Assembly: GCF_000150275.1 (NCBI RefSeq)
Contig: NW_002060975.1
Coordinates: 338,130 to 402,129, forward strand
Source: Trichoplax adhaerens
Taxonomy: Eukaryota > Animalia > Placozoa
Length of the DNA: 64,000 nucleotides
Reading direction: 5' to 3'
Part shown: positions 4,624 through 24,234 of the stretch, piece by piece
How positions within the stretch are numbered: position 1 is the stretch's first letter
Layout: each line of letters opens with the position of its first letter
Made by a program: the position numbers and the translations under genes
Notes under the pieces: model-generated
Databases searched by the model: none
The model's input: only the letters and a program-made list of their open reading frames with translations
What the model was told of the DNA's origin: nothing

Positions 4624-7600
4624 CTAAGCTCTTATTAATCCATCGTCGTCACTCGTCGGATCATTTGCAGAAAGGCCGTCATCTACATAGAGAAAGCATG
4701 TAGAAAATGATTTGAAAGTTGTAATTACTATCGCCAGGCATCAAATAAAGTACTTAAAAAACATTAAGTCAATACGCAGATTTGATTTAAACTTAAAGTT
4801 TACTATCACCAACTGTGGATACAAATGCTTGTAGTAGGTCATGTAACAACAGATACAGATACAAGCTTACCGTTCAATACGTCATCGTCATCATCTCCAG
4901 ACATTAAGAATGTTGCTTCGTCAGTATCTCGTCTAAAATGGCTACCAACAAATGTTTGCAATCGATTTCTTAATCTACGGGAACTATTGAAGTAATAGCA
5001 AGCTCCTATCAATACTAAGACAGCAACCGCGGCTATTGGTAAGGATATCTCCAAAATTGTTGTCAAGGACTGCGGTGCGGCTATACAATAGGAAATGATC
5101 CATTAAATAGATATTCATTTGAGTTATCACGACTAATTTATACCTATATTAGGATGTTTAGTACACAAATATCATGATCAGTAACAAATATGCTCATCCT
5201 GATACCTGTTGGTACGGGGTAGTAATTATATGTTAGAAATTTAGAACAAGGTCCTGAACCAAAATTTGTGTTGGCGCTAACTCGATACAGGTAGGTTGTA
5301 TTCGTTAACGGCCGGGAAAAGGTTGTCTTAGTAGTCGTGTAATCCTTTGATCCAGAATTTTCTGAAACACTCTCATGAACATAATAATTCTAAGGAATAA
5401 AAAATCTATTAGAGGTACGATACAAAGCCAGTAATAACTTTAGCATATGAAAACGTACAAGTATTTTCATTCCTTGTGCTAAGACAGGCTCTTTCCAATT
5501 CAAATAAATAGCGTTAGTTGTCGCTGATATGGAGAGATCACGTGGAATAGGCTTAACTACAGTTAAATATATAAAATTTAGGTTATTAAAGTTTAATTAG
5601 CATTAGCAGCGAAAGCAAATATTAGACAGCGAAAGATATGCATTGGTTATTTTCTATCTAGTAATATGATAGCTAATTACTAACCCCCTTTGGACACAAA
5701 AATTTCCGAATTGCCTGAATACTTTTGCCCACCGTCTGCTACCGCCGCTATACTAAAAATATACTCCATACCCGGGATTAGGTGTTTGATATTCGCTGTG
5801 TGAACAGATGCATCAACGATAACGTATCTGATAGGTACACAAGATGAAGGATCGTTCGCCCTCACAGTTAAGTCATAGGACTGAAATAAATAATCATAGT
5901 TCAAAACTGGTCATTTGCAGTATGACTACAAGTGAAGTTTTCGTAACACATCCGACATATTTACTATGTGTATAGATCAGTAAATATATAACCATAACGA
6001 TGAATGCCATTAGGGCTTATCCACGCATTAAGCTAAAATTACCTGGATTTTAACTGATGATGCTGCTGGTTTCCACGTAACGACAACTTTCAGTGTGGAA
6101 GGATCCATACTAATGTTCAAACGGCTAGGCGCTTCAAAGACAGCTAAATTGTGATGAAAGATAGGTATCTTTATTATAAAGCGTTGATTTATTAGCAATA
6201 AATAATGATCTATAATTGTCTATTAGGAAGCCATATGCAATATTTTGCTGGTCCTTACAAGTTTTCACTTGAATTTGTGGCGACTTAGGCCCGTATCCTT
6301 GCGTTGAAGAATATGCAGCGACCTAAAGCAATATTTAGACCTTAATTTTTAGATATATTAAGTAAGTGAAATTATCAAGTCATAAATTATTACCTGAATG
6401 TAATAGTTAGTATTGGCTCGCAGGTTATCAATAATATATCGGAGTCCTGGACCATTAGGATTTGTCAGACCAGAAGTCTTTATTACTTTGGACATAATTG
6501 ACCCACCATGAATGAAAATCTAAAATGGAAATATTATAGATAATTAACGACAGTGAATTATAATACAAAATCTAACTGTAATTAATTTATTTACGCCATA
6601 AAAAAGGATATTCCCATTAGATTGCTTCGGTGCCATCCAAATAACAGCAATGCTACTGCTATGAATTGATGAAGCTTTAACGTTTAACGGCGAACCAGGC
6701 TCTATATTATCATAAAATCGTATATTTATAAAATATGATGTACTTCTTAAAATATACGCGGTCACATAAAGTGTACTATCTTTATTTAAAGGTAATGAAA
6801 TCATCAAATTTAATAGTAAATTTACGTACTTCCAGCTAATGTTCTTATCGAAATCGGTGTTGCCTTTAGACCATTACGATTGGGCTCAATTACCGAAACA
6901 GTAAAAGAATATTGAGTAAAAGGAGAGAGATTTTTGACGACATAGGTAAAGTTAGATGTTTGTCCTTCCATCTTCCAAGATTTACCACTGTGCGTTTGCC
7001 TTTAATTAGACATATTGACTGTTAAATTATCTACATAAATATTTTTAATAACACCATCACTTACCTTGAATAAACCTTGAACGAATATTGTTGAGGCGTT
7101 CTAGTTAGCGTCCATCCTAAGGTAACTTGGTAACTTGCAATCTTGATAGCTGCCAGTTGACTTACAAAGTAGAGAGGATCTAAATATCAGAAAGTAAGGC
7201 ATCATTTAATAAGCCATAAATTAAAATTAAATGAATTAGGTATAAAAAGTGCTTACGTTTGCAATTGTGTTCATCAGATCCATCGGTACAATCGTTTATT
7301 CCATTGCATAATGCTTCATTGGGTATGCAAGTTTTAGAGAATTGACACCTAAATTGTGTATCTGAGCAACCTGGGGAAGGAGTTGGACCCAAGCCTGTGA
7401 TGATACCGCAAATTTAAAATTTTATAAAATTAGGTTTAATTAGATGAGGCTTGTTCTAGATTATCTAGGAATCATATACGCTATTCTATCTAGCTAATTA
7501 TTGTATATTTTTGGATTAAAAGCTATTTTACACTTACTGAAACCGCAATTCAATTCGTCTGATCCGTCAGCGCAATCGGCTCGCTTATTACATACGTATG

Positions 7601-10600
7601 TCGAATTTATGCACTGGCCGTTATGACACTTGAAACGGCCATGCCCACACTGACCCGTTGTAGTTGTTCCTGTAGGTTGAACAGTAGTTGAACCTAACAC
7701 CACAGGTGATAAAAATAATATTTACTAAAATGAAGAAAATGTAAAAGTAGCAGAAATATAGCATTAAAATGCAATCATAGATAACTTGAAACGTACCGCC
7801 ACAGTTTGCTTCATCCGATCCGTCCTGACAATCAGTTACATTATCACATAGATCAAAGAACCAAATGCACTTCTGATTATTATCGCAAGCAAATTGCCAA
7901 TGATGACATGGGCCACTAGGTGTAGGTGTTACGGGTACGGCTAAAATAGCGATAAGAAACGTATTACGAAGTAGCTTATAAATTGCAGGAATCAAATACT
8001 TAAGGCGTTAATTCTATTGAAAAAATAAAAACATACCAGTACCACTAGCACATATAACCCCGGCATCTTCCGTATGATCGCAATTATGGACGCCAAATTG
8101 GCTATGTTGACAATTTCTTATATCGGTCTCATTGCCCTTACACAAAACGTTATCCAACCAGATAGGTTGATTTGCGCTTCCTTGGCCACCTTGACCCATA
8201 ACCAAAGGTTGTAGAGCTCCTTTAAAGCCTAACTGACGACAGAGAACAATAGCGTCCGGAAGATTCCAGAAGTCATCACATACTGTACCCCAAAGGCCTC
8301 GATGATTAATTTCAACCATTCCCGTGTAATTATTGGTGGTTGTTTTTAATCGTACTAATACATAATCAATTAATTCGTGGTCAGTTTCTTTGACAACAGA
8401 TTTCCGACATACAATATTTATTAGTACCATCAACAATGGCATGATTCTACTTACAACAATTTTTCTCATCTGCTCCATTACTACACTGCGAAATACCGTC
8501 ACATCGTCCAAACATAGGTATGCATTCATTGGGTTTACAGGTAAAAACTTTCTGATTGCTGCTACATTGAATTGGTTTAACCGTCGGTAAAGGCATGGTA
8601 GCTAAGATATTAACGAAATATTAACACTTATTGAATCAAGAACAGGCATAGACGTGCTACCTATAGTATACAATAAATTGGCTGACGTTTACTAACGTTT
8701 CATTCCACAAACAACACCAGCATCTTCTTTATGGATACAGTTATGCGATTGCCAAGCAGACGTATTGCATTGATTAATATAAGTCTCAGAACCGGTACAT
8801 TTGACATCATCTAGCCAGATAGGGCCAGTACCAGCTCCAAAGAAAGCATTCTTAGGCGCTGCAGAAGCTGGTGGAAGTTTTAATTGGCGGCAGATTACGT
8901 TAGCATCATTAAGATCCCAGTAATCGTCACATATTGTACCCCACTTTTGGCGGTGAAAGATTTCTACTCTTCCTTCAGCATAATTGGTACCGTTGCTACC
9001 GCCGGCTAAGCGGACTGTTGACAATGATAACATATAAGATTTAATCTTATTTGAGTCGCTATGTCGACGTATACTGTATTATAAGTAGTACTTCGGTTCT
9101 GTAATGCACGAGATGACCTAACTAAACGCTACGACACAATCAAATACTGGAGCATTATATCAATGGAATTTTAAAATTCTAGTTACCAGGTGGAATAGAA
9201 CAGATGATTCCAACATCGTTTGTATGTGCACAATTGCTATTTCCCCAACCGCTAAAATGGCATTCCTTCAGATGTTTTTCGCTACCCTTACAAGCAACAC
9301 CTTGCATCCATACAGGTCCAGTTCCAGAACCGAAATGACTGGTACTGGTGACTGAATCGGCTTGGCTAAAACCTAAGGTCATTTTAAGATAATTTCATTA
9401 ATTATATTATTGTAATTTTTGTCAATTTTATTGGCAATGAATGTAATTGTCGAATTTATAGAATGCAGAATTAACTTTAGAGATATGAATATATATGATA
9501 TAAACATCATAGTCCGCAAAAAGCACACTGGAGTCTTTACCTAATTCACGACAAGCAACATCAGCATCAACTTTAGTAAAGCCATTGCTGCAGATTGTAC
9601 CCCATCGTCCGTTGTGAATAATCTCCAGTCTTCCCTCCCTTGTTGAATTACCACCAACTAGTCGCACTTTATATTTTATAAGGAAATTATAAGTGGGATT
9701 AAATTACTTTTAATTTTAATTAAAATATATTACCGAAGGTGCAGTGTAACATATCAATTCAATAATATAAGAGGTTCTTAAGGTAATATTATACATGCAT
9801 GTCCTGTACCTTCTGAAGTGTCACAAACGATACCAACATCTTCGTTGTGTCCACAGTTATGGTCATTCCAATTATTATGAGCGCAGTCTCCTATACTTTG
9901 TTCAGTTCCATTGCACTGCACCTCATCAAGCCATATTGGACCATTGCCTTGACCAAATGGAGCTCTCCCTAGAGCTGCTGCGGCTCCAATAAAGCCAAGC
10001 TGTTTACATACAACATTTGCATCAGTAATATCGAATCGATCATCGCATACGGTACCCCAAACACCGTTAAAATTTATTTCCAATCGACCCTGATTGGGTT
10101 GATTACCACCAACAAGGCGAACTGTATTTAAATTTATTGAATGCGACGTTAATGGGTGATATATTGAAACAGTATACTGGAAACACAATATATCAAAATA
10201 TTTAATATGGATATTTGCTAATCATACCCATTGGATAACTACATACGACACCGGCATCATGCGTATGTTTGCATTTGTTGTTACCCCAACCAGAGCTTGG
10301 ACATTGATGCAAATTTAATTCATTTCCTTTACATTGAACATCTGTTAACCAAACCGTACCATTGCCTTGACCAAATTCAGCCATTTTAGCGACCCTGATG
10401 GCCCCAGTATATCCTAATTGCTTACAAATAACTACTGCATCGTTCTGATCCCATTTATGATCACAAATTGTTCCCCATTTTCCTTTATGAGATACTTCAA
10501 TTGTTCCCTGTTTATAGACATTGACTTGATTGGCAGTAACAAGGCGAACTAGAAATCACATAAATAATAAATAAATAAATGGAATATATCACTTCAAATA

Positions 10601-13600
10601 TGAATAGTACAAATCGATAACAAATACTGTACGCTTACCAGGTTTAGTCAGACAAGAAACGCCAACATCATATCTATGCGAATTACAAGCTGAGCTACTA
10701 ATACCCCAACCCGAATACGGACATTCGGTTATGAAAGATTCATTGCCTTGGCATCTAACATTCGACAACCAAACTGTTCCATTACCAGGCCCAAAATTGT
10801 TAGTTTGACCAAAAACAAGATTAACTGGTTTTGCACCAGGGAACCCTAGACTGCGGCACACAACATTAGAAGTAGCTATTCTCCAACCAAAATTGCATAT
10901 TGTTCCCCAAAAACCGTTATGCTTTATTTCAACACGACCTTCGGCAGATGATAGACCTCCAACAAGTCTCACTTAAATTTAAGTAAAATGATATATATAC
11001 AACATTAAAAGTGCAATGTTATTCCTTAATTAAAGTAATTGAAGATAGTTAGACATTTAAAAACTTGCTTCATCGGCTGCTACAATATACCTGGGGCTTG
11101 ACTACAAACAACACCAGCATCGTTTGCATGAGTACAAGTTGTATTACTCCAACCGGAGTGAGTGCAATCCAATAGTGATGATTCACTACCACTGCAATGA
11201 ACATTATTTAGCCAGATTTTGCCTTGACTACCGCCAAATTGACCAAAGTAAACAGCTTGCACTGCTTCATAATAACCAAGTTGTTTGCATACAACAGTTG
11301 CTGCTTTAATGTTCCAATTGCCATCGCAGACCGTCCCCCATTCATTGTTGTGAAAGACTTCCACACGACCTTCAAATTCGTATTTGCCGTTGGTAATTCT
11401 CACTGGAACCAAAAAGTTAATGTTGTTAGATCTCACATGATAAGTTATTTAATGGCTGCTACTCACCAGCTGGCGCAGTATGTACCACATACTCATTGGT
11501 ATAATCACTAAAAACGTTGTCATAAGTACCAGCAGCAACCTGAAAGACGATTTAGCCCAAAAATTAGCTATAAGAATTTCCTATACCGTCATAATTGTGG
11601 AGTAGTTGCTCAATCGTATGTAAAATGGCATACCCTGACATAATATGTTGTAAACGGTATAAGATTCGAGATGATAACAAAGGAATTTCTGGTTGTAATT
11701 GTTGTATCTAAAAATCCAAATCTATAGGCGACCTAGTTTGAACGAGTTATCATGAGATAAATTTGCGTATGAGGATCATTTTAAATTCAGGAGTCCTACT
11801 TTATAATTTTTGATCACAACTCCAGGCGCCGACGAAGCCTCCCAGGTTACTTTAATTTTGTTGGCAGCAAGTACAAACGCTTTCAAATTTTTCGGTGGTA
11901 ACGGTTCTATAGATATGAAATCACCAAAATCATATTTTATATCAATTCTAGTGGTCACATTTTTACCATATTCAAACGAGTAAATCCAAAAATCGAGCTA
12001 TGCTTAATAGATTAGAGCATAATAAGAAATCATTTTGTTTTCATGGCTTACTCGACGCATATGTTGAAGTAGTGACAAATGGTGCTTTACGTAACACTGC
12101 AGCCGATTTCGTTATAATGGTAACGGTTGCATCATAAGTTGTTTGTGGCTGTAAGTTGGATATAATTTTCGAATGGTAAAACTTTGGCACATCTACGTAG
12201 CTTGGCCAATAGTTAGCATCGAGATTATGACCAGAAATTCTAAAATGAAATAAATTTATGATTAAATGAGTTGATAACGTATAGCTCGTACGCTAGGTTG
12301 AACATGCAAGATATTAAATTAAGTCGTGGAAAAAAACTATCTTTATTTTTATTTACCTGTAATAGATACGATAATGATCTACTTGATATTTACTATTCTG
12401 TACATATTTCCATGATATCCTTAAAGAATGAGCCGAAAAGGGTGCTGCTACTAAAGATGAAACAACTAAGAAAAAGCGAGGAAAGAATTAGTAAATTACT
12501 AGATTATTTATTAATCTTTGAAACTGTGAAAACTATTCATTTATTAATTAACTTACTATCACATGACTTTTCGTCCGATCCATCACTGCACTGGTTAAAT
12601 CCGTCACAGCGCCCACTTTTTACAATACACTGACCACTAGTGCAACGAAATTCAGAATTGCTACATTGATGTGAAGCTACGAGTAGAAAATTGCATCGTT
12701 TATTAACGAAAATACTGCTATAAGATATCAACTGACTAATATATGAAAATTTCCATCTACTTACCACAGTGCTTTTCATCGGAATTGTCACCACATTCAT
12801 TGATGCCATTGCATACTTGACTATTCTTTTTTAAGCAGACGCCATTGGCGCACTTAAAACCACTGCATGCTACAGTATATAAAGTTAGAGTCATATCTTT
12901 TTAGGTGCTGTACTTTATAAACATGATTGAATGACGCGAAAGATATTGCAGAGAGTCACAGTGACTGTTGTTAGAATCAGACACTACTGACTATATATAC
13001 ATATAATTATTTACGAATGAGTTACAACTCACTAATATTGCAGATATTTCACTCATAATATGATAAAATTTAAGGAAAGTAAAAAATCTTGGGATGTAAT
13101 TCTTGTAGGAAAAAATAGGTTCTCGAAAATGCTAACCTTGGCAATGACGCTCATCCGCGTCATTACTACAGTCTTGCTCGTTATCGCATCTGAATGAAGC
13201 TGGTATACAACGTGGAAGTGAACCTGCACCGCAATCGAATTGCTGGGAACTACAGTTTGTAGGTGTTGTAGGCATTATAGTGGTTTTTGTCGGTGCAGCT
13301 GTTAGATAATTGATAGATTATTAACTGTTTGTAATGCCTATTGCAGCCGATATGAGCACTAAACAGATCAACTGACTACCTGTAAAACCACAGTCGAGTT
13401 CATCACTACCATCGGAACAATCTGTAACATGATTACAAACCGATGCCTTAGGAATGCATCCACCACTCAGACAAGCAAAACTGTTAGAACCGCACGATGA
13501 TGGAGTACTCGTTCCAGACGGTTGAGTTGTAGCTTAAATTCAAATATACATATTGACCACATTACATAAGTGTAATTTACTCAAAATTGAAATAATAATA

Positions 13601-16600
13601 CAAAATCTTGGTAGCTGTAATACAGTTCACGCTTACGACAATTAGCTTCATCTGAAGAATCTGGAATAAAAAATCCTTGGCAGTCTACTACCCCATCACA
13701 AACATACGACAACGGAATACAAAATTTAGTAACTTTGCATTTAAACTGGTTACTTCCACATTGGCTGGATTGAGTAGTAGGAGCTGCTGTTGTTGTGGTG
13801 GCTAGAAACAATTTATAATATCGTTCATTATCGAAATTATAAGAAACAAACGGCAGTAATTTCATTGTCTATGCAACAAGAGCATAGTGAAACTTACTGT
13901 TGCAATTCTTTTCATCACTGCTATCCCCACAATCCGCGATTCCGTCACACCGCCAAATATTCGGAATGCATTCGCCATTATTACATACGAATTGGTTTAT
14001 TGTACATGGTTTTGGAGCTAAACAGGTTTTATATTAAAGGAATCAGTTCATCAATCAACATTGCTACCAAGCTATTGATAATGATAGCTATAACTATAGC
14101 CATCTTAAATACTTCTTTAACGTTGTGCATCAATGATTAATCGGCGATTATTTTAGATTGGTACTTACTGCATTTCTTGGGTTCATCCGAATTATCTCCA
14201 CAATCATTAAATTTATCGCAAAAAAATGTCTTGGGAATACAAGCGCCATTCTTACAACGAAATTCACTTGACTTACAAGAATCTTAGTAGCAAAAAAATA
14301 AATTCCAGAGTATTAATTTCAGTGTCATGATGATAATACATGTAATTACATGCTAGAGACGATTGTAGTTACGAATGATGATAACTTACGAGAACTAACG
14401 CAATACTTTTCATCACTATTGTCGTAGCAATCATTATCTCCATCGCAAACGTAAGACTTCCTAATACAACGCTTATTATTGCATCTAAATTCATCACTGG
14501 TACAATTCGGACGAACTGAAATAGAAATGAAAATTGCCATCAGAAAGCCATTCATAAGATAGAAAAGAAGTTCCAGCTAATCCTGGGCTTTGACGGTTTC
14601 TATTAATATAGGAGTGAGGAAATTAAATACCGCAATTTAATTCATCGGATCCATCACGACAGTCCTTTATAAAATCGCACTTCCTGAAATTACTTATGCA
14701 ACGTCCATCAGAGCAAGTAAATTGCCACGACGCACACGTTTGGAAAGAACACCCTAACATTTACAATCAGATTCATAAACTAAATTAGGTAATTTGATAA
14801 AGTAAACGCAATTTGGCAAACGTAATAAAGGTATCCTGCAGTAAAAAGGGTCATTATTAATTAACCGAAATTTCAGAATTCTTGACAATGACATTTTCGT
14901 TAATTACAAATAGTATCAAAGTACAGCATATGAGGATGTTCTTTATACTGATCAATTGCAGAGCATGCACTACTAAAATGTAGTATTTATAGCTTATCGT
15001 AAATTCGAAAAGACATGAATATTTCAGTAAATCAGGCAAGTAAAGAGAACTCTTTCTCTAATGAAATAAAATTACCTAATTCGTCTGAATTATCACCACA
15101 ATCGTTATCATGATCGCAATGCCAAGACTTTGGTATACATTTGTGATTGTTACAGGTAAATTGATTAGATTTGCAGCTACTTGAATTAGCTGTAAAAGTT
15201 AAAATGAAAAGATTGTTACTTAATGGTATTACTGTATACAGTGTAGGTAAGGCATACTTGCAGAACAGAATCCACCAGGTTGCAAGACTTCTCCGCTTTC
15301 ACATACGCAAGTCATTTTACCATTACTAGTTATAGTTTTAGCGTTGTCAGGACACAGACATACGTGACCATTATTTGGTAACGGTGCACATAAGTGGGAA
15401 CATCCACCGTTGTTGTTAGCACAACCATTAGTCCCTGATTAACAATAAAAAACTTAAATATACCATTCTAAATAATGACATTTCCATAAAACTTCAAAAT
15501 TTTAAATTCCAATAGATACAATAAACTTAATATACATCATATGTTTTAACAGCATACGTTTTAACATTCTGTTAAACTATTGCAACTTTCAATCTAAGGG
15601 TATCGATTTACTATTACAGTAACAACTCGCCTATATTTGCATTTTGTAGCAATATTTCTTTTGCCTATACCTGTTTGAGAAGCTTGCCGAAAAGCCTTAA
15701 CATCGGTTAAGTAAGTCAAAGAACTAGCAATAACTTTCACATTTCCTCCGTTATTATTTGCTTGGAAAATTTTCTTTAATTCTGAATCCGCCCAATAAAT
15801 GCTATCCTTAAACACAGCTATGGCAGTAGGGTATGTAACATTGGAAGTTATTATTGTTCGTCTACTGTGTCCTTGCGATGTTGCCGTTTCAATAATATGG
15901 CGAGTTTTGTCAGTCCAATAAAGCTGCTGTCGCGCAATATCAAGAGCCAAACCAGAAGGATAACCGAGATTTGACTGAACTATAGTAGTAATCCCAGTGC
16001 CATCCATGTTAGCTCGCATTATAGAAGGCTTATTGTTTACATTGGTCCAGTATAGATATCTGTTTAGTTTACAATATAAACGTTAAAACATGCTACATAT
16101 TCATTTGTACTATTTACAAGCAGCATCTGAAAGGCTATGAAAAGTATTCAAATAGTTATAATTTATTCTTAAGGCGTAGTATTAAAATCTTCAAAGTTAT
16201 ATTATTCACCCTCTAGCTGGATCTAAAATCAATGATTCAGCGTTATCCATGTTAGTTGTAAGCAGAGTGCGACGATTTGTACCATCTTTCTTTGCTACTG
16301 ATAACTCTTTTCGCTTCTGGTCTATCCAGTAAATATTATTCGATATCCAATCTAAAGCCATACCACCGACCTATCCGGAAAGATTTCGATAGTAAGTTAA
16401 TCCTTCGATTTACATGGGCTTATTAAAATGTGTTTATGCTTAATTTTATATTTTTGTCACTAGCTGCAGCTTTTACGATTTTAAATCTAACCTGCGCAAT
16501 TTTAGTGGAAACAATTACTTCTGGCCAACCAGTACCATTCAAGTACATTCGCCTAATTGAAGGTGTTTGACCATTTTCGCCCCAATATAAACAGTTTTGG

Positions 16601-19600
16601 CTAAAGTCGTAATCAATGAAACTTACACCAATTAAATTAATTGGTAAGGTTTCGGCAATACTGGCACCAAATCGGAAACGTCCGATGCTAAACCTCTGAG
16701 AAAATAAGAGAAACTCGGACAATTCTGTCGAATTTCAAGAGAAAAATATTGGTTTAAAATTGTAACGTAATACTAATAGGTATAATATTAAAGTAGCTCC
16801 TAGCGTTTTACTTGCAACCGGGCATAAAGTCTTTTGTGGTCCGATAGTATTTTCTACACCTCCAAAACAAGTATCGTCCGCAATTTTTCGATATCTAATC
16901 ATAACCAGATGTAGTTAACTTGTAGTAATTAGTGCATTAATATGAGAAATAACAATGTATGGCTGTATGTAGCAAACATACCCTCTTGTTCTGTAGTAAA
17001 ACGAGCCCTCTGGGCAAGAAACTGGTATTTGAGGTGGTTGCGCCAGCGAAGCAGATAAAAAGCAATTTCCAGTGAAGAACGAATGGTAATAGCCTTCATC
17101 GCTAAAAAAAATAGTAATGAATGTAAGAAACTAATAATTACAGTCAAAAATATTTGGCAAATATAATAAATAATAAATTTTATAAAGAACCCGATCCGTA
17201 TTACCATTCAAAGTCATCGCGTATACACGTGCAATTTTGAACACTGATTGGTCTGTCATAGTTTCGTCCATTGTAACATCGGCTTTTAGTTTTACGACGC
17301 TCATATGTCATTTTCCTGCCAAGTACACACTTCGTACCTGGAGCACCATCTAATTTATCAGATGGTACCCATTTCTTATAATCGTTTAATGTACATGATC
17401 TTCCTAGCACATTTTTCATATCTATCTGAACTATAGTCCATTCATGATGTCCAACCGGTGATCCAACAATGGTAAAAACTGTTGTTTGCTCACCAGGCTC
17501 GGTGGTTAAACCATATGGCAACATTGCAGTACTATTAAAGATGTAAGTTGACCAAGATTCTCCTTCATCCCAACTATAGCTAATTATTTAAATAACGGAA
17601 ATCATCAATTAAAGTATTTAATAAGCAGGATTAGCTATAAGCAAAAATTAGAGAAGATTTAATCACAAGAAATAGATATTTAATTACTTACTAGATAACA
17701 TTCGTGATATAATACCGTCTTACTGCCGCAATAAGTCCGCCATGGTCAGCTACAGCGAACATAAATTGCCCTTTCATAGCCTGTAAAGTAAAACCAAACA
17801 GACAATATTATGGCGGTGCTTATTACATGGGGTATGTATATAAACAGACCTCTCTCCAATCGAATCCTCCATCTGTTGAAATATACATGCTTATGTTTCT
17901 CGATGTTAAATTTGCACCGACACTTCCGTGTCCAAGTATAAAACCAGGAGCTGAGGCTGAAGTATAAACTGCGCTCGGAAATGGAGATTGATAGTACGCA
18001 GTGTAGCGCAGTCCTAGATGTAACGAGCAACTCTAAAACGATACGTTTTAAAACATGAGACAAAATGATCGCAATAAGGATAAACTATGAATCAAGAAAG
18101 ACATATATTCTACCAACTATGTTGCTAAATCATTACTCTAGAAAGTCACAAATTTCATGCATTTGTAATTACAGACATGATATAAGAAAGTACGTAGCAT
18201 TAATATTACATTTAATTATTATAGTTAGACTGTATTCAATGAAATACTAAAACACCATTGTTTATAGTAACATGAATTTAGGTACAGATAATACCTCACA
18301 GTATACTCTATAACAGAAGAAATTAAATACTACCGTACTTTAGATGAATTTGAAATGCAAGCTGGATATGAATTGCCGTTAGAATCGGTAGCTGGAGGTT
18401 TAATGGATTTCCATTTAGCCCCATTATTATAAGTAATTAATGTGGTAATGTAGATAAAATTTTGGGAATCGGGCTTCGTGAGCTGCGTTGCAACGTAGAC
18501 TCCTAATAAACCCTTCAATTTGGTTATATCGGCAAATAAGGGACTTCTCCTGTTTAAATATAAAGATTCTTGCTAAGATCATATGTACTCGTATTCAATA
18601 TGCGATATTAAGTTATCGATCATATATTACTGTAGATAACGCTATTTTGATATTAAGTAAACTTACAAATCATATTTATGAACAGGTGGGGTGGCATGTA
18701 AGAAAGGATTAAAATATAATACGCGCTGCAGTGATAACGTATACTGTAAGCCTGAAGCATCGGAAATATATAAATCCATCCCTTTATGATTGTTATCAAC
18801 AACAACAAGCACTTGATCCGTAGTAGAATCAACAATGAAATAATCCTAATAATATCGAGAAAAAATAGCACGTTCAGAAAAATTGATATTTTCAGATTGA
18901 TATTTACAACTTTTACATACCTGGTTCTTATGATTTTTTAAGGGAAAGTTTGCAATCTGGAGTGCACCACGATTCTTAGATACCAAAAGATCGAGAAATC
19001 CACGTTTCTAAATAGTATAAACGGGATAGATTATTAGCTAGAATAACATGAACTTTGATAAATTAATTGATATATGCAAAATTATAGAAAGTACCGCTAT
19101 CATCAAAACTTACGTTAGATTTAACCACAAAAATGTAAGAACCTTGCATATATAATTCTGTGCCATTTGTCGCTAGTACCGTTCGCTTAATTCCAGTTTG
19201 AAATATGAAATCAAGTTTAATCATTGTCGCTAGGCCACCTTAAAAACATACAATTTCATACAATTACGGCATGTCATAACAAGTACTGAATGGAATAGCA
19301 ACGTTTTAGCATGAAAGCAAAATGTTCTATTTTTGATTACGTTCGCAATGAGATGCTTTATAAACGGTTAAGATACAGTATATTATATTATTCGAGGAGA
19401 TTGTTGTGGTTGTACTGTGGATAATATTACTGAAAATGCTTAATCTTGACATGTGTAACATTCTAGAATTAGTTATTGGACACTGACTTAATTACGATAT
19501 AATTAAGCTCGAATACACTACCTATATCTTGACGCTCTAAAAATACAGTTTGAGATGGATCCATATTTGGTTTGCCCCTATTAGTATTAAAGTAATCAGT

Positions 19601-22600
19601 CAAACTTTAGCACTAAAGAATAATGAACAAGTACAATAGCAAGTAGAGCAAGAACAGTTTAAATTCGCATTTTTTTAAGCTAAAGTAAATTAATTAAAGG
19701 TGCACTACTATTCTTACTATTATGTCATGCGAGGCTACTGTTGTACGGTCATAGCTATTACCGTATACAGCATATGTAGTAAGACTTGATTACCATGAAA
19801 TATAATTAAAAAATGAAGAACTCACCAATAAAAGGCTTTAATGTTGACGTCAAGTAACTTCCATGTAGTTCCAAAGTCATTTGAAGCATAAAGCTATAAA
19901 AAATGCATGAAATAACAATTATCAACACCGTCAAAAGCATTATTGATTAGAAACATTTCCGAAATGGAACTCCGATCGACTGATTTTAGTTGCTAATGTT
20001 ATATTTCGTTCTTTACCTTATTGTTATCACTGGTGTCAAGAGCTAAGACGTAATCCGCAACAGATGGATGGGGTACAATTCTATACGCTTTGAAAGTAAT
20101 CTTAATCGGTAAGACTGATTGACCTTCATCAAAGGTAACGAATAGGTATTTATGGGCGACATCAGCAAAAATTTTCTAATAATAGCAAATTAATGATAAT
20201 ATTAGTCAATCACATTTAGAATATAAATACACGAAATGATAAAGTAAAGTCAGTTATTCTTTCTTTTTATCTTTAATATCACTTTGTATCCCTTTTAGCT
20301 GTTAAAATGACTGCAAATGATTTGATTAAATACTGAATTGATACTTTACAGACGTGGATCAAAGTGACGATTCACAAATTATAAACTTGTTACACTAACA
20401 ATCTTATTTCATTCATTACGTAGTGATGACAATACCGCATATCGTCTATCTGCTATACGTACGAGTACATGTACTTACGCGTCTGAAATCAATAGGGCTG
20501 GTGTAAAAATTGTCTACCGAAGACGGATTGCCATTCAGCAAGCGAAAGTCAGTAGTACGATTAACAAAGGTCTTTCCATAATTAGTAGAAATATAGATTC
20601 GACTATAGCTCGTATTGCTGAAAAAATTGTCACCAGTTACCACAATAATGGTACCACTTCCCTGACCGGACCAGTGAATAATCAATCGATGCGTTGAATC
20701 TTTCAAATTGGCCTGGAAAGATGTAAGTAATCCAATTAGGTTTAGATACATTGCAAGAGTAGTTTTCTAACTTTTCACAATCCAGTATGTTCATGATCTT
20801 ATCATTATCTATCATATCAGTAGGTAAAACTATGATATAATCTATATTATAATATTAAAGTTATGATCTTGTAATCTATACAAGATTTAACTCATAGATC
20901 AAAGAGGTTTATTAATCAGAAGTAGCCTTTACCGACATTCTTGCATAATATGGACTATACATATTGTTAAAATTGAATATTACGCGTATATTTGAATATG
21001 ACATGATCTATCAGGTCATCTGTGAAGGACCGTTAGCTAATCAAAGCTTCTACTAATTTGATACACTGCATGTACAGTGGTATTCTCTCTTACTTTGTCT
21101 GCAGCTATCAATGTTAACATTGTCTGGCATTATAATTAGTAATATTGTATAACGTGGATGAAAATTTTAAAACAGTCCATAGTGTTGAAGCCTTACATAC
21201 ACATAACAGTCAACTTGTATACAGTCTATGTCAAGTTTATCTTCTATTCAGAGTCTTGTAACTTAATGATATTGTTTTTTCTTCTTGTAAACTAGCCACT
21301 ACGTGATTGACAACTCTATTCTTTATTCACTTCCTGTGGTGGCGTAGTCTCGTTAACCTTGCCTGGTGTGTACAGTCATGGTACAGCGCAAGGAAGCAGT
21401 CTTTTATGATCAATTTTTGAGTTTCAACAAGCTGTATAAATAAATATTAAGTATCTGTAAAGCTACCTTACTGAATGTATCGATCGATTTGTTCTACATA
21501 CTAGAAACTACCTGTTCAGTTCAACATTAAACGAGCAATTGATAACTATGTACAGTAGAGTCTACAGTCGTTGCCAATCGATGAAGGCACACGAGTGCAA
21601 ACAGCTATCGTAGATATCGAACTGTACTGTCCTGATCATGAACAACACTTTCCATCGGTATCAATTAATGGCAAGAAGATGATCCAAACAGCATATCGAT
21701 TGCATGATTTCACGCCTTTGATCCAACATACTATCGACTCCATCTTTCAGTGTAGTGCTATCGATTTTTGTTTATTTATATCGACTTTTGTTTAGAAAAG
21801 GAGGTTCGTCTATCTATTCCCTTCGTTACTGGAAAATTTCTTTTTAGCTAGTAACTCTTGTTTTGACTACAGTAAATACTCGATCAAGTTGATACGATTG
21901 CTATTAACGTTATAGTCTCTGCCGTACACCATGATCAAGGCATGCTACTGATCGTTGTAGTTAGTGCAAAGCTCCGCAGATCTTCATAACAGTTCACACC
22001 TTGCTTGTATCAATAAATTAATCATGAATACTTTACTGGTAATGGATGGTCTTCACCTTAACAGTAAATTGACTCTTGCTTACTTTCAAGCCAAATGTGG
22101 ACTAACTCGACAGTAACAGACAGCTATTACAAACAAGTATTCCATGCAGATACTTTTCTATTACGTAGAAGGAATTATTTGCTCATCTCTACCTGGTTTG
22201 CCTCCATTATTGACTGCTATACAGCCTTCAAAAATTCCCACATCGGGCAAAATAATTGTGCTACAGTACAAATCACTCTGGGAGGATCCGCCCAATACGC
22301 CATACTATCCAGCACTTTACAGTGTAGAGTACTGCATTTCAGCCACAGTATCATGCACGGTGATGTCATGACTTGCGCAGCACAGTACTAACTACTGACT
22401 GCAATCGTGCAATGGTGCGCTTATCGTGATGGAGAGAACTGAAAGTTTACTGTCATCATGCAATTATTGGTGCATCATCAACAGTGCAAATAGAAACAAA
22501 TTTGAGCTAAGGTATATGGGTTGGGGTACTACTATGTTTTCGTCTTGTATTTGGGAATTGAAAAATATTTCATCACCATCGTCTAACACAGTAGCACCAA

Positions 22601-23353
22601 TTCAATTTATCCATGGATAATAATTATTGAACTGTGGGTAGAGAGGACATGGAAATCAATTCGATACAGAAAGGGCTTCTTGTGATTGAGAATAGAAGGA
22701 AAGAGGCCTTGAAAGCGATCATCAACACGATCCACTACTATTACAAAATAACTCAGCGATTTCGCGTTACTATAGTGTAAAACTGTTGTTCGATCTCTCA
22801 CTACAACGATGTTGAAGAAAAATAGCATCATAGTTCAGCAAGAATAAAGTGTATTGATTACAGCAGACAACAACGAGACATGTATACTTATTGCTACTTC
22901 ACGAGCCGTTACAGTAGATAAACAGTCAGTGATGATGATCATTTTTGCTGACATCAAGTGCAACGCTTAAAAGACTCATCATGGCACATATTCGATAACA
23001 GCATAGTACAGTACTGTCATTTCATGGTGGTATCATAAAGACTTTGATCGCGTTTGATGATTTCATCATGCATTAAGGTTAAGTGAACTTACCACCGATG
23101 TACCATTGGGGGCAGGAGGCGGTGCAGTATTGGCTCTTTTAATCCGCTCTTTGGAATGGAAAACTTGCTTTACAGCTTCCTTTATTGGAATCTTCTTGGG
23201 CAGGGTGATTTGGTAAAAGTTCTGCCGTTCAGTCACCACTGTATGAGCAGGTAACTGTTGGTTATTTTCTGCGTTGAAGACGAACGAATCGTCCTTCGCA
23301 AAGGCTAGCAGGATAAAAGCGGAAAATATCAGAAACAGCTTCATTAGTGCCAT
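4624..23353 (-). CDS. SORL1: Sortilin-related receptor SorLA-like: SP-propeptide-VPS10/10CC-YWTD-EGF-10xLDLa-2xFN3-6xSRCR-LDLa-SRCR-3xLDLa-4xFN3-TM-tail
   Basis: ATG at 23353 with a signal peptide and a furin-type RIKR site (23135-23146). VPS10 exons resemble SORL1 (e.g. [22 protein letters not shown]; [19 protein letters not shown]...W), followed by YWTD repeats, LDLa and FN3 domains and a TM exon (4871-~5080). The tail has FVGSHF, an acidic cluster and SDDDGLIRA*; stop TAG at 4624-4626. Confidence 0.92.
7257..11402 (-). other. SRCR/LDLa cassette: SRCR1-6 (11402-8698), LDLa (~8601-8454), SRCR7 (~8353-8037), three LDLa (~7940-7257)
   Basis: Seven group-A SRCR motifs (VRL..G...GR.EI.H.G.WGT.C...VC..LG...WL..V.C.G.E...C......C.H..D.GV.C). 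SRCR5 is split over two exons; the others are single exons. Confidence 0.9.
12558..15189 (-). other. Ten single-exon LDLa (complement-type) repeats
   Basis: Ten short exons, each of the form C-x-F-x-C...CI...C-D/N...C-x-D-x-S/A-DE-x-x-C, counted by manual translation. Confidence 0.8.
15259..16724 (-). other. YWTD propeller + EGF domain exons of SORL1
   Basis: LYWGE, IYWID, LYWTN, LYWTD and IYWAD repeats, then the EGF sequence [14 protein letters not shown]...CLC. Confidence 0.85.
16813..20712 (-). other. VPS10 beta-propeller + 10CC domain exons of SORL1
   Basis: BNR/Asp-box motifs ([24 protein letters not shown]) and 10CC cysteines ([24 protein letters not shown]...CTCIRDDFE). Boundaries approximate. 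Confidence 0.85.
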
Positions 23354-23440
23354 TACTTAATTTCCTAGCTTGATTATTATAATTTTGAAAGGCTGAACGA
23401 ATGATGTCAACTTCAATAGTTAGTACGTGATATACGCGAA

Positions 23441-23790
23441 CTGTACTGTACGTCCATACAGTCCGGTATACACTACTGCAGTAGTGTACATACAGTACAT
23501 ACAGTAGCACTGTACTGTATGATGAACACGACAGTAAATGTACAATTGTACACTAAAATGTACAGCACAGGGTTAGGGTTCGGATTTTGTACAGTACACA
23601 GGCAGACTACTAAGTACTGTACACTGTACAAATCGAAAACAAGACACGGTACTGGGCAGACCTGAGTATCGAAAATGACATAGTGTTCCTCATCAAATAC
23701 AGTATTGTACGCGTGTGTAGTGTACGAGTGTGCGTACGGGTAGCGAGTTCTCCAGTACAGTACCCGGTACCAGGTACCAGCAGACGTCTG
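23441..23790. promoter_or_regulatory. TACAGT/ACTGTA motif cluster upstream of the SORL1 start
   Basis: Dense actgta/tacagt/gtacag words about 90-440 bp upstream of ATG 23353. The regulatory role is inferred from position only. Confidence 0.45.
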
Positions 23791-24144
23791 ACGGTCCAGG
23801 TTTAAAGTTTACCCTCATTGACTTTAGCGCGTGACCTTTCAAACAGAGTCTGCGTACACGTAGCATTTTTGCCGCTACGACTGTCATAGGAATAAACAGA
23901 TACAGTCTATTTGTACAATATGATATAATACAAATACAGTACATAGGTGGATCGGAAGGATACAGTAGTAATTTTTTACAGCTACTTCTGACAAAGTAGT
24001 ATTGTAATAGCAATTGATAACATACTCTTTAGCTAACCGACAATTAAGTTAAACCGAAGTGGAGATCCTCCAGAAGATCGAGACTTTATCAATAGTGAAG
24101 TTAAAGTTTTATAATAGAAATTTTTGTTGAAGCACTCGATGATT

Positions 24145-24234
24145 GTCCCCGTGGCGCAATGGATTAGCGCATTGGACTTCTAACGTACTATGGTAGCGAT
24201 TCAAAGGTTGCGGGTTCGAGTCCCGCCGGGGATG
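24145..24234 (+). tRNA. tRNA-Arg(TCT) with a 16-nt intron (24183-24198)
   Basis: Acceptor stem GTCCCCG/CGGGGAT, A box TGGCGCAATGG, anticodon stem TTGGA/TTCAA with TCT at 24179-24181, intron at the canonical 37/38 site, B box GGTTCGAGTCC. Confidence 0.96.

What the first reader, a model, noticed from the sequence alone, without database searches (positions are those of the whole stretch)
7257..11402. SorLA receptor with a 7xSRCR + 4xLDLa cassette inserted into its FN3 stalk: a candidate scavenger/pattern-recognition sorting receptor
Seen: a continuous, phase-compatible exon chain runs VPS10-YWTD-EGF-10 LDLa-2 FN3-[6 SRCR-LDLa-SRCR-3 LDLa]-4 FN3-TM-tail. Known: vertebrate SORL1 has 11 LDLa plus 6 contiguous FN3 and no SRCR; group-A SRCR arrays (DMBT1/MARCO type) often bind microbes or lipids. 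The FN3 total here (2+4=6) equals the canonical count, so the cassette looks inserted between FN3-2 and FN3-3. Inference: a microbe- or particle-binding module coupled to retromer/GGA endosomal sorting, possibly for feeding or innate immunity. I do not know this architecture from described SorLA proteins.
Basis: partly seen in the sequence, partly recalled or inferred. Interest (0 to 1): 0.85.

Follow-up and report, generated by a model that had tools for sequence, protein, structure and literature searches.

The report
Placozoan SorLA receptor carrying SRCR domains
The single SorLA-type sorting receptor gene of this placozoan really does carry seven scavenger-receptor (SRCR) and four LDL-receptor class A modules spliced into its stalk, but a 2019 placozoan immunity survey already listed what is almost certainly this gene, and what it binds is untested.

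Summary
On the minus strand, 7257-11402 holds 12 exons encoding 7 SRCR and 4 LDLa domains (Pfam E 1e-7 to 1e-35). All 12 are canonical GT-AG, phase 1-1 exons with lengths that are multiples of three.

RNA contigs from four studies splice these exons to FN3 exons on both sides. One 9,849-nt contig matches the summed length of the whole model (about 9.2 kb CDS, about 3,070 aa).

The rest of the gene is a recognisable SorLA:
- signal peptide and furin-type propeptide;
- VPS10 and 10CC;
- YWTD and EGF;
- 10 LDLa and 6 FN3 (2 before the cassette, 4 after);
- transmembrane segment and a tail with diverged FANSHY-like, acidic-cluster and C-terminal motifs.

Metagenome contigs from a diverged relative keep both cassette borders, exon lengths and splice sites. 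SRCR dN/dS is 0.04-0.17.

None of 225 long VPS10 proteins fetched carries SRCR, including two cnidarian SorLAs and many bilaterian ones.

Kamm et al. 2019 (Dataset S3A) list one "Sortillin-like" SRCR receptor in Trichoplax sp. H2, without discussing it.

Microbe or particle binding is inference only; three of the seven SRCRs keep the full cation/ligand site. This is a real, lineage-specific variant of moderate interest.

The parts
23093..23353 (-). Predicted exon 1: start codon, signal peptide, and a propeptide ending in a furin-type RIKR site. It is followed by an intron of about 2.4 kb.
   Evidence: Open frame read. No RNA was laid here.
17204..20718 (-). VPS10 beta-propeller and 10CC exons. 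There are at least nine exons, and the exon model in 19100-20020 is incomplete.
   Evidence: PF15902 and PF15901 hits exon by exon. The exons map in order on the SorLA profile at human-like residues 94-683. The stretch is collinear with relative contig L001.
15654..17100 (-). End of 10CC and the YWTD (LDL-receptor class B) beta-propeller exons.
   Evidence: PF00058, E 4e-27 and 1e-8; profile mapping to residues 685-1022.
15258..15434 (-). EGF-like exon.
   Evidence: PF14670, E 1e-10; splice model.
12555..15190 (-). Ten LDLa (complement-type repeat) exons, mostly phase 1-1.
   Evidence: PF00057 in ten separate open frames; phase-compatible GT-AG chain.
12052..12450 (-). FN3-1, in two exons: 12357-12450 and 12052-12239 (282 nt in all).
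   Evidence: Sequence read. The depth bins fit these exon ends exactly. There are a weak fn3 hit and a weak profile match. Lengths and splice sites are conserved in L002 for 12052-12239.
11467..11906 (-). FN3-2, in three exons: 11800-11906, 11634-11732 and 11467-11539 (279 nt in all). It ends in phase 1.
   Evidence: joint 11402/11467 and depth bins; identical exon lengths and AG/GT in L002.
11091..11402 (-). SRCR1 exon (312 nt, phase 1-1, six Cys). The cation-site residues are not kept.
   Evidence: PF00530, E 8e-35; RNA joints; 87% amino-acid identity and dN/dS 0.04 against L002.
10639..10971 (-). SRCR2 exon (333 nt, phase 1-1).
   Evidence: PF00530, E 1e-26; adjacent contig pieces, table 8; dN/dS 0.10.
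10228..10548 (-). SRCR3 exon (321 nt, phase 1-1).
   Evidence: PF00530, E 1e-31; dN/dS 0.17.
9810..10121 (-). SRCR4 exon (312 nt, phase 1-1). Cation site 2 is complete (D, D, E). Site 3 has E in place of the second D.
   Evidence: PF00530, E 3e-34; dN/dS 0.10. Residues read against SALSA numbering.
9187..9666 (-). SRCR5, split into exons 9541-9666 and 9187-9372 (126 + 186 nt).
   Evidence: Each half matches one half of PF00530. Joints 9666/9810, 9370/9539 (+2) and 9014/9187 are.
8697..9014 (-). SRCR6 exon (318 nt). All six SALSA-type cation-site residues are kept.
   Evidence: PF00530, E 8e-34. Best solved-structure matches are CD163 domain 7 and DMBT1; residues.
8455..8601 (-). LDLa-a exon (147 nt, phase 1-1).
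   Evidence: PF00057, E 2e-8; 90% amino-acid identity in L012.
8037..8354 (-). SRCR7 exon (318 nt). Site 2 is complete. Site 3 has N in place of one D here, while the relative has D.
   Evidence: PF00530, E 5e-29; 79% amino-acid identity in L012.
7257..7940 (-). LDLa-b (7797-7940), LDLa-c (7538-7693) and LDLa-d (7257-7394) exons. Each has a Pro/Thr-rich linker and each is phase 1-1.
   Evidence: PF00057, E 3e-7, 1e-13 and 2e-11; joints; conserved in L012, with one 6-nt in-frame length difference.
6830..7179 (-). FN3-3, in two exons: 7065-7179 and 6830-6999 (285 nt in all). It starts in phase 1.
   Evidence: Joints 7179/7257, 6998/7064 (+1) and 6701/6830; weak fn3 hit; conserved in L012, where the first exon is 112 rather than 115 nt.
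6259..6701 (-). FN3-4, in three exons: 6595-6701, 6394-6519 and 6259-6322. The last two ends are predicted.
   Evidence: Joints 6701/6830 and 6519/6595; splice model; weak fn3 hits.
5206..6131 (-). FN3-5 (6043-6131 and 5685-5880) and FN3-6 (5459-5556, and 5206-5389 or 5206-5371). Both are predicted.
   Evidence: Phase-compatible GT-AG chain; fn3, E 4e-5, for 5683-5910.
4624..5080 (-). Transmembrane and cytoplasmic tail exons: 4871-5080 (or 4871-5032) and 4624-4682, including the stop codon. Tail motifs are FVGSHF, SGDDDDD and C-terminal DDDGLIRA.
   Evidence: Profile match to the SorLA transmembrane and tail region, E 4e-7; tails compared; splice model.

Best explanation
This is the single SorLA/SORL1-type gene of a placozoan. 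The assembly has 105.6 Mb in 1,414 contigs, which fits Trichoplax adhaerens.

Shown:
- It is transcribed as one mRNA of about 9.8 kb. Exon lengths sum to a type-I membrane protein of about 3,070 residues.
- The domain order is: signal peptide, furin-type propeptide, VPS10/10CC, YWTD propeller, EGF, 10 LDLa, 2 FN3, then [6 SRCR, LDLa, SRCR, 3 LDLa], then 4 FN3, a transmembrane segment and a tail.
- The 937-residue cassette is built only of phase 1-1 exons sitting at a phase-1 domain boundary.
- The cassette is under strong purifying selection and is present with the same borders in a diverged relative.

Inferred:
- The cassette arose by exon shuffling into the inter-FN3 intron in the placozoan lineage.
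- The protein still works as an endocytic and endosome-to-Golgi sorting receptor. Its tail keeps diverged versions of the retromer-binding (FANSHY-like), acidic-cluster and C-terminal GGA-type motifs.
- The cassette adds a second ligand-binding arm placed between the distal VPS10-LDLa block and the membrane-proximal FN3-3 to FN3-6. In this arm SRCR4, SRCR6 and SRCR7 keep the acidic cation-binding cluster that mediates Ca2+-dependent binding of polyanionic ligands in SALSA/DMBT1, MARCO, CD6 and CD163. The four LDLa repeats also keep their calcium-cage DxSDE-type motifs.
- The likeliest role is capture of extracellular polyanionic or particulate ligands (microbial surfaces, debris, food macromolecules) and their delivery into the endosomal system.
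For: Architecture and transcript:
- Pfam hits exon by exon.
- GT-AG joints in RNA contigs of four runs from four studies, with single contigs crossing the whole cassette and both borders.
- Phase and length of every cassette exon.
- Summed exon lengths of about 4,470 + 3,714 + 1,026 nt, against a contig of 9,849 nt that has 4,583 nt upstream and 1,552 nt downstream of the laid stretch.

SorLA identity:
- Collinear mapping on a profile of 40 SorLA proteins, including the transmembrane and tail region at E 4e-7.
- Tail motifs compared with eight SorLA tails.
- This is the only Sortilin_C locus in the genome that lies beside LDLa or SRCR.

Conservation:
- L002 and L012 keep exon lengths, AG/GT sites and both cassette borders.
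- Exons are 65-83% identical against 35-53% for introns.
- dN/dS is 0.04-0.17, with dS about 1-1.4.

Lineage specificity:
- None of 225 VPS10 proteins of 1,200 aa or more has SRCR. The set includes Hydra and Sanderia SorLA.

Ligand site:
- Residues equivalent to SALSA D1019, D1020, E1086, D1058, D1059 and N1081 are all kept in SRCR6 and nearly all in SRCR4 and SRCR7 (sequences; residue roles from PMC7043408).
Against: - No ligand, localisation or cell-type datum was obtained, so function is inference from domain families.
- Four of the seven SRCRs lack the cation-site residues.
- The tail motifs are diverged (FVGSHF for FANSHY; DDDGLIRA for DD-x-P-x-V-x-A), and binding to retromer or GGA is untested.
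- RNA was laid only on 6500-12400. The link to the VPS10 and transmembrane exons rests on contig-length arithmetic and on a splice model that is incomplete in 19100-20020.
- Contigs drop rare isoforms, so an isoform that skips the cassette cannot be excluded.
- No anthozoan, ctenophore or demosponge SorLA was identified among the proteins whose source I looked up.
Confidence: 0.6

Rival explanations
1. The architecture is the same, but the SRCR/LDLa cassette does not recognise microbes or particles. Instead it binds endogenous proteins, such as secreted enzymes, matrix or signalling ligands, or other cargo to be sorted. Alternatively it acts mainly as a long, glycosylated spacer that changes the reach or oligomerisation of the receptor.
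For: Vertebrate SRCR domains often bind endogenous proteins: CD163 binds haemoglobin-haptoglobin and CD6 binds CD166, both cited in PMC7043408. Four of the seven SRCRs lack the cation site. Pro/Thr-rich linkers precede the LDLa modules. SorLA itself is a cargo-sorting receptor, and its FN3 region mediates dimerisation: human s3Fn1-4 dimerises while s3Fn1-2 does not (PMC9942828). A module inserted after FN3-2 could therefore tune geometry without breaking that segment.
Against: Strong purifying selection on each SRCR exon argues for specific binding surfaces rather than a plain spacer; it is as strong as, or stronger than, on three of the four neighbouring FN3 exons compared. Three domains keep the complete polyanion and cation site.
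Confidence: 0.3
2. The cassette is an optional, alternatively spliced module. Because all 12 exons are phase 1-1, skipping from 11467 to 7179 would give an in-frame canonical SorLA with six contiguous FN3 domains. On this reading that canonical form is the main functional form.
For: Exon phases allow in-frame skipping of any or all cassette exons. Four joints were not displayed. Contigs drop rare variants. In run X11 the transcript was assembled as two contigs with different depth, breaking inside SRCR7.
Against: In all four runs the assembled path includes every cassette exon, and no skipping joint was listed. The four joints not displayed are about as many as the five ordinary joints expected in the stretch but missing from the table (one is confirmed in table 8, the other four fit the depth bins). 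Cassette exons are under strong purifying selection and are conserved in a relative.
Confidence: 0.1
3. The chain is an artefact: two neighbouring genes, a misassembly, or read-through transcription joining a separate SRCR gene to SorLA.
For: None found.
Against: Spliced RNA contigs from four studies cross both borders with canonical splice sites and an open frame. Independent metagenome contigs of a diverged relative have the same order across both borders. The RNA contigs show no insertions or deletions against the genome.
Confidence: 0.01

Closest known systems
SorLA / SORL1 / LR11 (vertebrates; 'sortilin-related receptor' of Branchiostoma, Lingula and Hydra, the last known as head-activator binding protein)
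   Same: It shares the signal peptide and furin-type propeptide, VPS10 with 10CC, YWTD propeller, EGF, a cluster of LDLa repeats, FN3 repeats and a single transmembrane segment. It also shares a short tail with an F-x-x-S-H-[YF] motif, an acidic cluster after SG, and an acidic-hydrophobic C-terminus.
   Different: It has a 937-residue block of 7 SRCR and 4 LDLa between FN3-2 and FN3-3. It has 10 rather than 11 LDLa upstream, and diverged tail motifs. No SorLA fetched here has SRCR.
TrispH2_007580, the single 'Sortillin-like' entry among SRCR transmembrane proteins of Trichoplax sp. H2 (Kamm et al. 2019, BMC Genomics 20:5, Dataset S3A)
   Same: It is very probably the orthologue, or the same gene in a near-identical species. 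It is an SRCR-containing, sortilin-like transmembrane protein. In this genome only one Sortilin_C locus lies beside SRCR. RNA contigs labelled with a second organism differ at only 3 positions across the laid stretch.
   Different: The paper gives only a locus tag in a supplementary table. The words sortilin and VPS10 do not occur in its main text. It does not describe SorLA orthology, the insertion site, exon phases, conservation or tail motifs. Identity with this gene was not checked by sequence, because the protein could not be retrieved.
Multi-SRCR endocytic and scavenger proteins: CD163, DMBT1/SALSA, MARCO, SR-AI, SCARA5
   Same: It has tandem SRCR domains on the ectodomain of an internalising receptor. 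SRCR6 matches CD163 domain 7 at 118 bits and DMBT1 at 131 bits. The acidic cation and ligand site is kept in three domains.
   Different: It has six cysteines per domain (the group-A pattern), although the best sequence matches are group-B proteins. There is no collagenous or coiled-coil stalk. The SRCRs are embedded in a SorLA backbone, and four domains lack the cation site.
Mosaic proteins that combine SRCR with LDLa (complement factor I, enteropeptidase and other TMPRSS proteases, corin). This entry rests on my own knowledge and was not tested here.
   Same: SRCR and LDLa modules lie adjacent and are encoded by symmetric phase-1 exons, the classic substrate of exon shuffling.
   Different: Those proteins end in a serine protease domain and have no VPS10, YWTD or sorting tail.

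Membership tests
SorLA / SORL1 (VPS10p-domain receptor with LDLR-type and FN3 modules) | N-terminal VPS10 beta-propeller followed by the 10CC module | tested here: met
   PF15902 matches on five exons (E 0.005 to 4e-17) plus one marginal match (E 0.07). PF15901 matches at E 3e-26. Mapping on the SorLA profile is collinear.
SorLA / SORL1 (VPS10p-domain receptor with LDLR-type and FN3 modules) | YWTD (class B) beta-propeller plus an EGF-like module after VPS10 | tested here: met
   PF00058, E 4e-27 and 1e-8; PF14670, E 1e-10.
SorLA / SORL1 (VPS10p-domain receptor with LDLR-type and FN3 modules) | Cluster of LDLa (complement-type) repeats: 11 in vertebrates, 7-8 in the two cnidarians scanned | tested here: met
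   Ten separate PF00057 exons lie upstream of FN3-1. Hydra has 7, Sanderia 8 and Branchiostoma 10 stretches.
SorLA / SORL1 (VPS10p-domain receptor with LDLR-type and FN3 modules) | Six contiguous FN3 domains before the membrane | tested here: not met
   Six FN3-sized units of 93-99 aa are present, but they are not contiguous: 2 + cassette + 4. The per-exon fn3 evidence is weak (E 4e-5 to 0.1), because each domain is split over 2-3 exons and the exons were not joined.
SorLA / SORL1 (VPS10p-domain receptor with LDLR-type and FN3 modules) | Single transmembrane segment and a short tail with a FANSHY (retromer) motif, an acidic cluster and a C-terminal GGA-binding motif | tested here: inconclusive
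   The transmembrane and tail exon matches the SorLA profile at E 4e-7. The tail reads FVGSHF, SGDDDDD and [12 protein letters not shown], against FANSHY, an acidic cluster and DD(E/V)P(L/M)V(I/V)A in bilaterian tails. Binding to retromer or GGA cannot be tested here.
SorLA / SORL1 (VPS10p-domain receptor with LDLR-type and FN3 modules) | Propeptide removed at a furin site | tested here: inconclusive
   An RIKR site lies about 50 residues after the predicted signal peptide in the open frame 23069-23356. Exon 1 is predicted only, and cleavage is untested.
SRCR superfamily, group A versus group B | SRCR fold of about 100-110 residues; six Cys in group A, eight in group B | tested here: met
   PF00530 matches seven times. 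All seven domains have exactly six Cys. In the alignment to CD163 the two extra group-B cysteine positions are not Cys. By cysteine count this is group A, although the best sequence matches are group-B proteins.
SRCR superfamily, group A versus group B | Cation-dependent ligand site (SALSA D1019, D1020, E1086; D1058, D1059, N1081) | tested here: inconclusive
   The site is complete in SRCR6. It is complete for site 2 in SRCR4 and SRCR7. It is absent in SRCR1, 2, 3 and 5 (sequences; residue roles). Binding itself was not tested.

The most novel reading that the evidence does not exclude
Placozoans fused a pattern-recognition arm to the retromer/GGA sorting receptor SorLA. One protein would then capture bacteria, debris or food polyanions through Ca2+-dependent SRCR sites and route them through endosomes, serving as a single-molecule link between scavenging or feeding and endosomal sorting. 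It could have a role in managing intracellular symbionts or in nutrient uptake by an animal that has no gut. In-frame skipping of the phase 1-1 cassette could switch the receptor between the canonical and scavenger forms.
Probability: 0.25. Interest if true: 0.65.

Novelty: new variant of a known kind. Interest (0 to 1): 0.42.

Why it matters
SorLA is a deeply conserved sorting receptor and a causal Alzheimer gene, and the function of its FN3 stalk is still being worked out. Here a natural variant carries a 937-residue ligand-binding block after FN3-2. That leaves FN3-3 to FN3-6 next to the membrane. In humans an FN3 1-4 fragment dimerises while an FN3 1-2 fragment does not. So the boundary after FN3-2 tolerates a large insertion over long evolutionary time, which bears on models of SorLA dimers and minireceptors.

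For placozoan biology, the gene is a concrete, expressed and conserved candidate linking the expanded SRCR repertoire to a defined trafficking route. It is also a clean textbook example of exon shuffling with symmetric phase-1 exons.

The value is limited for two reasons. The gene was already catalogued in 2019, and lineage-specific SRCR domain combinations are reported to be common in placozoans.

Tried and rejected
- Retrieving the public full-length protein of this gene failed. The representative search with the 10CC exon returned only an 87%-identical 107-aa fragment from a relative and no protein longer than 2,366 aa. The word-index search is bounded by query length, and its 120 listed hits for a Branchiostoma SorLA query were almost all deuterostome, mostly vertebrate.
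- An alignment of Branchiostoma SorLA with single window exons, meant as a profile query, scattered the fragments and was dropped.
No whole-protein domain scan or structure prediction of the model was therefore made, and the protein length is a sum of exon lengths.
- One-to-one orthology of FN3 domains could not be resolved. Exons after the cassette hit the profile weakly and at inconsistent positions.
- The search for a donor of the cassette was inconclusive. The best SRCR6 paralogue (59% identity) lies in an SRCR cluster on contig C1413, but the two 10-kb stretches examined there hold no LDLa.
- The other five Sortilin_C loci (C1407) showed only VPS10-region matches in 10-kb looks. I take them as sortilin-like rather than SorLA, but wider flanks were not read.
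- Literature searches for SRCR with VPS10, for the locus tag, and for placozoa with sortilin gave nothing that describes this architecture beyond the 2019 table.
- Earlier notes of this scan held only the same finding and an unrelated one.
- The Sycon 'sortilin-related' protein has PKD and FN3 domains but no LDLa. It is not a SorLA and is a weak outgroup.

Full report
**What is there**

The window is AT-rich (about 34% G+C) and intron-dense. It lies at C1382:338130-402129 of an assembly of 105.6 Mb in 1,414 contigs. By my own knowledge that fits the first Trichoplax adhaerens assembly.

A stop-to-stop scan of the minus strand shows a long row of short open frames. They read as a signal peptide, VPS10, YWTD, EGF, LDLa, FN3, SRCR, LDLa, FN3, a hydrophobic segment and an acidic tail.

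Pfam scans were made one open frame at a time, each given by reference. Within 7183-11448 they find seven SRCR domains. E-values are 1e-26 to 1e-35 for six of them. The fifth is split by an intron into two halves that match the two halves of the model. The same scans find four LDLa repeats, in the order 6 SRCR - LDLa - SRCR - 3 LDLa.

Upstream lie ten LDLa exons, an EGF-like exon, YWTD repeats, and the VPS10 and Sortilin_C exons.

**One transcript**

Twenty public runs hold the stretch or part of it. Many of them hold about half of its sampled words, as expected if they carry exons only.

I laid contigs from four runs of four different studies on 6500-12400; one run is on record as RNA-seq. 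All four show the same set of joints with CT..AC ends on the plus strand, which is GT..AG for a minus-strand gene. There are no insertions or deletions and at most three base differences.

Single contigs of 4,378, 5,736 and 9,849 nt run through the whole laid stretch and beyond its ends. In the fourth run two contigs meet inside SRCR7.

After the tool's stated cut shifts are applied, every cassette exon has an AG acceptor and a GT donor, has a length that is a multiple of three, and opens in frame 2. Every flanking intron is therefore phase 1.

The exons of FN3-1 and FN3-2 were read from the sequence. Their ends reproduce the depth of every 197-base bin to within two bases, and that difference is explained by an ambiguous 'GT' at one joint.

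Lengths are sums of exon lengths:
- A GT-AG, phase-compatible chain exists between all successive coding pieces upstream and downstream. It is incomplete in 19100-20020, where contig L001 shows two further conserved blocks.
- The sums are about 4,470 nt from the start codon to 12401, 3,714 nt inside the laid stretch, and about 1,026 nt down to the stop at 4624.
- The 9,849-nt contig has 4,583 nt upstream and 1,552 nt downstream of the laid part.

The contig therefore fits a full-length mRNA with about 110 nt of 5'UTR and about 530 nt of 3'UTR, encoding about 3,070 residues. This last step is arithmetic, not a direct observation of the VPS10 and transmembrane exons in the contig.

**It is a SorLA**

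A profile built from 40 full-length sortilin-related receptors maps the window's exon frames in order. The set runs from a mammal to amphioxus, echinoderms, molluscs, annelids and arthropods. The mapping runs from human-like residue 94 to 1688, and the transmembrane and tail exon maps to 2131-2197 at E 4e-7.

The tail reads R-R-L...FVGSHF...SGDDDDD...[12 protein letters not shown]. The bilaterian tails read HRRLQ..F.FANSHY...SGDD/acidic...FSDDEPLVIA-COOH. All three classical sorting elements are therefore recognisable but diverged.

The first exon has a signal peptide and an RIKR site.

The genome has six Sortilin_C loci. The other five lie on another contig in long uninterrupted frames and show only VPS10-region similarity in the 10-kb stretches I read. 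This is therefore the only SorLA-type gene found.

**Conservation**

The searches turned up ENA metagenome contigs of an unnamed relative; two separate assemblies (ERZ23499115, ERZ27263980) supplied the three contigs used here. Its exons are 65-83% identical in DNA and 63-90% in protein.

- L002 is collinear with window 13289-9807. It covers LDLa8-10, FN3-1, FN3-2 and SRCR1-4.
- L012 is collinear with window 8807-5666. It covers the end of SRCR6, LDLa-a, SRCR7, LDLa-b, -c and -d, FN3-3, FN3-4 and part of FN3-5.

Most exon lengths are identical, and the three that differ do so by 3 or 6 nt, in frame: FN3-1a, LDLa-c and FN3-3a. AG and GT are kept at every RNA-supported exon compared except the FN3-1a acceptor, which I did not resolve. 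Introns are only 35-53% identical and full of gaps.

For SRCR1-4, dN/dS is 0.04-0.17 with synonymous sites near saturation. This is as low as, or lower than, in three of the four neighbouring FN3 exons compared.

Both borders of the cassette are therefore old and under selection. SRCR5 and most of SRCR6 are not covered by these contigs.

**Lineage specificity and prior knowledge**

A local SRCR profile finds no SRCR in any of the 150 best VPS10 representatives.

That set includes Hydra vulgaris and Sanderia malayensis SorLA, which have VPS10, YWTD and 7-8 LDLa; an fn3 match was found in Hydra only. It also includes many bilaterian SorLAs. The Sycon protein in the set is not a SorLA.

None of the 120 listed homologues of amphioxus SorLA carries PF00530.

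The full-text search finds a single paper holding both SRCR and VPS10, and it does not concern this architecture.

However, Kamm et al. 2019 catalogued 45 SRCR transmembrane proteins of Trichoplax sp. H2. Their Dataset S3A has a column 'Sortillin-like' with one locus tag, TrispH2_007580. Only one sortilin locus here lies beside SRCRs. RNA contigs under a second organism label are almost identical to the window. I therefore take that entry to be this gene's counterpart.

The paper also states that placozoan scavenger receptors use more than 20 domain types, in combinations mostly restricted to the phylum. The combination has thus been noticed and is one of many. What is added here:
- the SorLA orthology;
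- the exact insertion site and exon phases;
- the transcript proof;
- the conservation and the selection;
- the state of the ligand and sorting motifs.

**How it probably works**

All seven SRCRs have six cysteines and are 43-51% identical to each other, so they are old copies rather than a recent tandem burst.

SRCR6 scores best against CD163 domain 7 and DMBT1 among solved structures.

Reichhardt et al. 2020 showed that SALSA SRCR8 binds its ligands through cations held by D1019, D1020 and E1086 (site 2) and by D1020, D1058, D1059 and N1081 (site 3). The equivalent surface serves MARCO, CD6 and CD163. Counting from the Asp-Asp after the second cysteine gives the following:
- SRCR6 has all six residues at the same spacing.
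- SRCR4 has D, D, E for site 2 and D, D, E, N for site 3.
- SRCR7 has site 2 complete.
- SRCR1, 2, 3 and 5 have lost most of these residues.
- The relative shows the same pattern in the domains covered.

Three of the four cassette LDLa repeats keep the D-G-S-D-E calcium-cage motif, and all four exons begin with a Pro/Thr-rich linker.

In human SORLA an FN3 1-4 fragment dimerises while an FN3 1-2 fragment does not (PMC9942828). The cassette sits just after FN3-2, so the membrane-proximal FN3-3 to FN3-6 stay together.

My best reading is therefore a SorLA that still cycles between surface, endosome and TGN, and that has gained a second, Ca2+-dependent, polyanion-binding arm. Whether its ligands are microbes, food macromolecules, debris or endogenous cargo cannot be decided from sequence.

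Because every cassette exon is phase 1-1, in-frame skipping is possible. No skipping joint was among those displayed.

**Verdict**

The feature is real, expressed, conserved and lineage-specific. It is a clear variant of a well-known receptor, made by exon shuffling.

It is not categorically new, and its bare existence is already in the literature. Its function is open. Interest is moderate.

Noticed in passing
window 24145-24234 (+): A 90-nt tRNA gene lies about 800 bp upstream of the SorLA start codon (Rfam RF00005, 56.6 bits). ARAGORN, run with bacterial settings, calls it 'tRNA-Pyl, anticodon CTA'. More probably it is an intron-containing or long-arm eukaryotic tRNA, and its identity is not resolved.
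   Followed up: partly
window 20713-23092 (-), intron 1 of the model: The first intron is about 2.4 kb, while the RNA-verified introns further down are 64-172 nt. It holds a G+C-richer patch around 22000-24000 with plus-strand open frames (for example 22095-22391) that have no Pfam match. No RNA was laid here, so exon 1 and this intron are prediction only.
   Followed up: partly
window 2397-2744 (+): An open frame has a weak match to the DHHC palmitoyltransferase domain (E 1e-4, below the cut-off). It is probably an exon of a neighbouring plus-strand gene downstream of the SorLA 3' end.
   Followed up: no
G000:C1407:1383789-1428999 and 1138920-1139408: Five further Sortilin_C matches lie in long uninterrupted open frames of 396-483 aa. 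Four of them fall within 45 kb. They may be tandem sortilin-like genes or one multi-VPS10 protein. The 10-kb stretches read hold no LDLa or SRCR.
   Followed up: partly
G000:C1413:3182212-3256177 and C1414:10945697-10996594: There are large clusters of SRCR exons. One domain, at C1413:3182212-3182490, is 59% identical to SRCR6, closer than any other SRCR of the cassette (43-51%). It could share ancestry with the cassette, but no LDLa was found in the two stretches read.
   Followed up: partly
window 8037-8100, run X11: In one run the transcript is assembled as two contigs that meet inside SRCR7, with mean word depths of 233 on the 3' side and 41 on the 5' side. This may be 3' bias or a shorter 3' transcript. 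Contig depth cannot decide.
   Followed up: no
P0002 (2,057 aa, Logan) and about 20 other hits: About 20 proteins of 979-2,278 aa match the 10CC exon in three or four separate stretches each. These are multi-VPS10 proteins of unknown source, distinct from SorLA.
   Followed up: no
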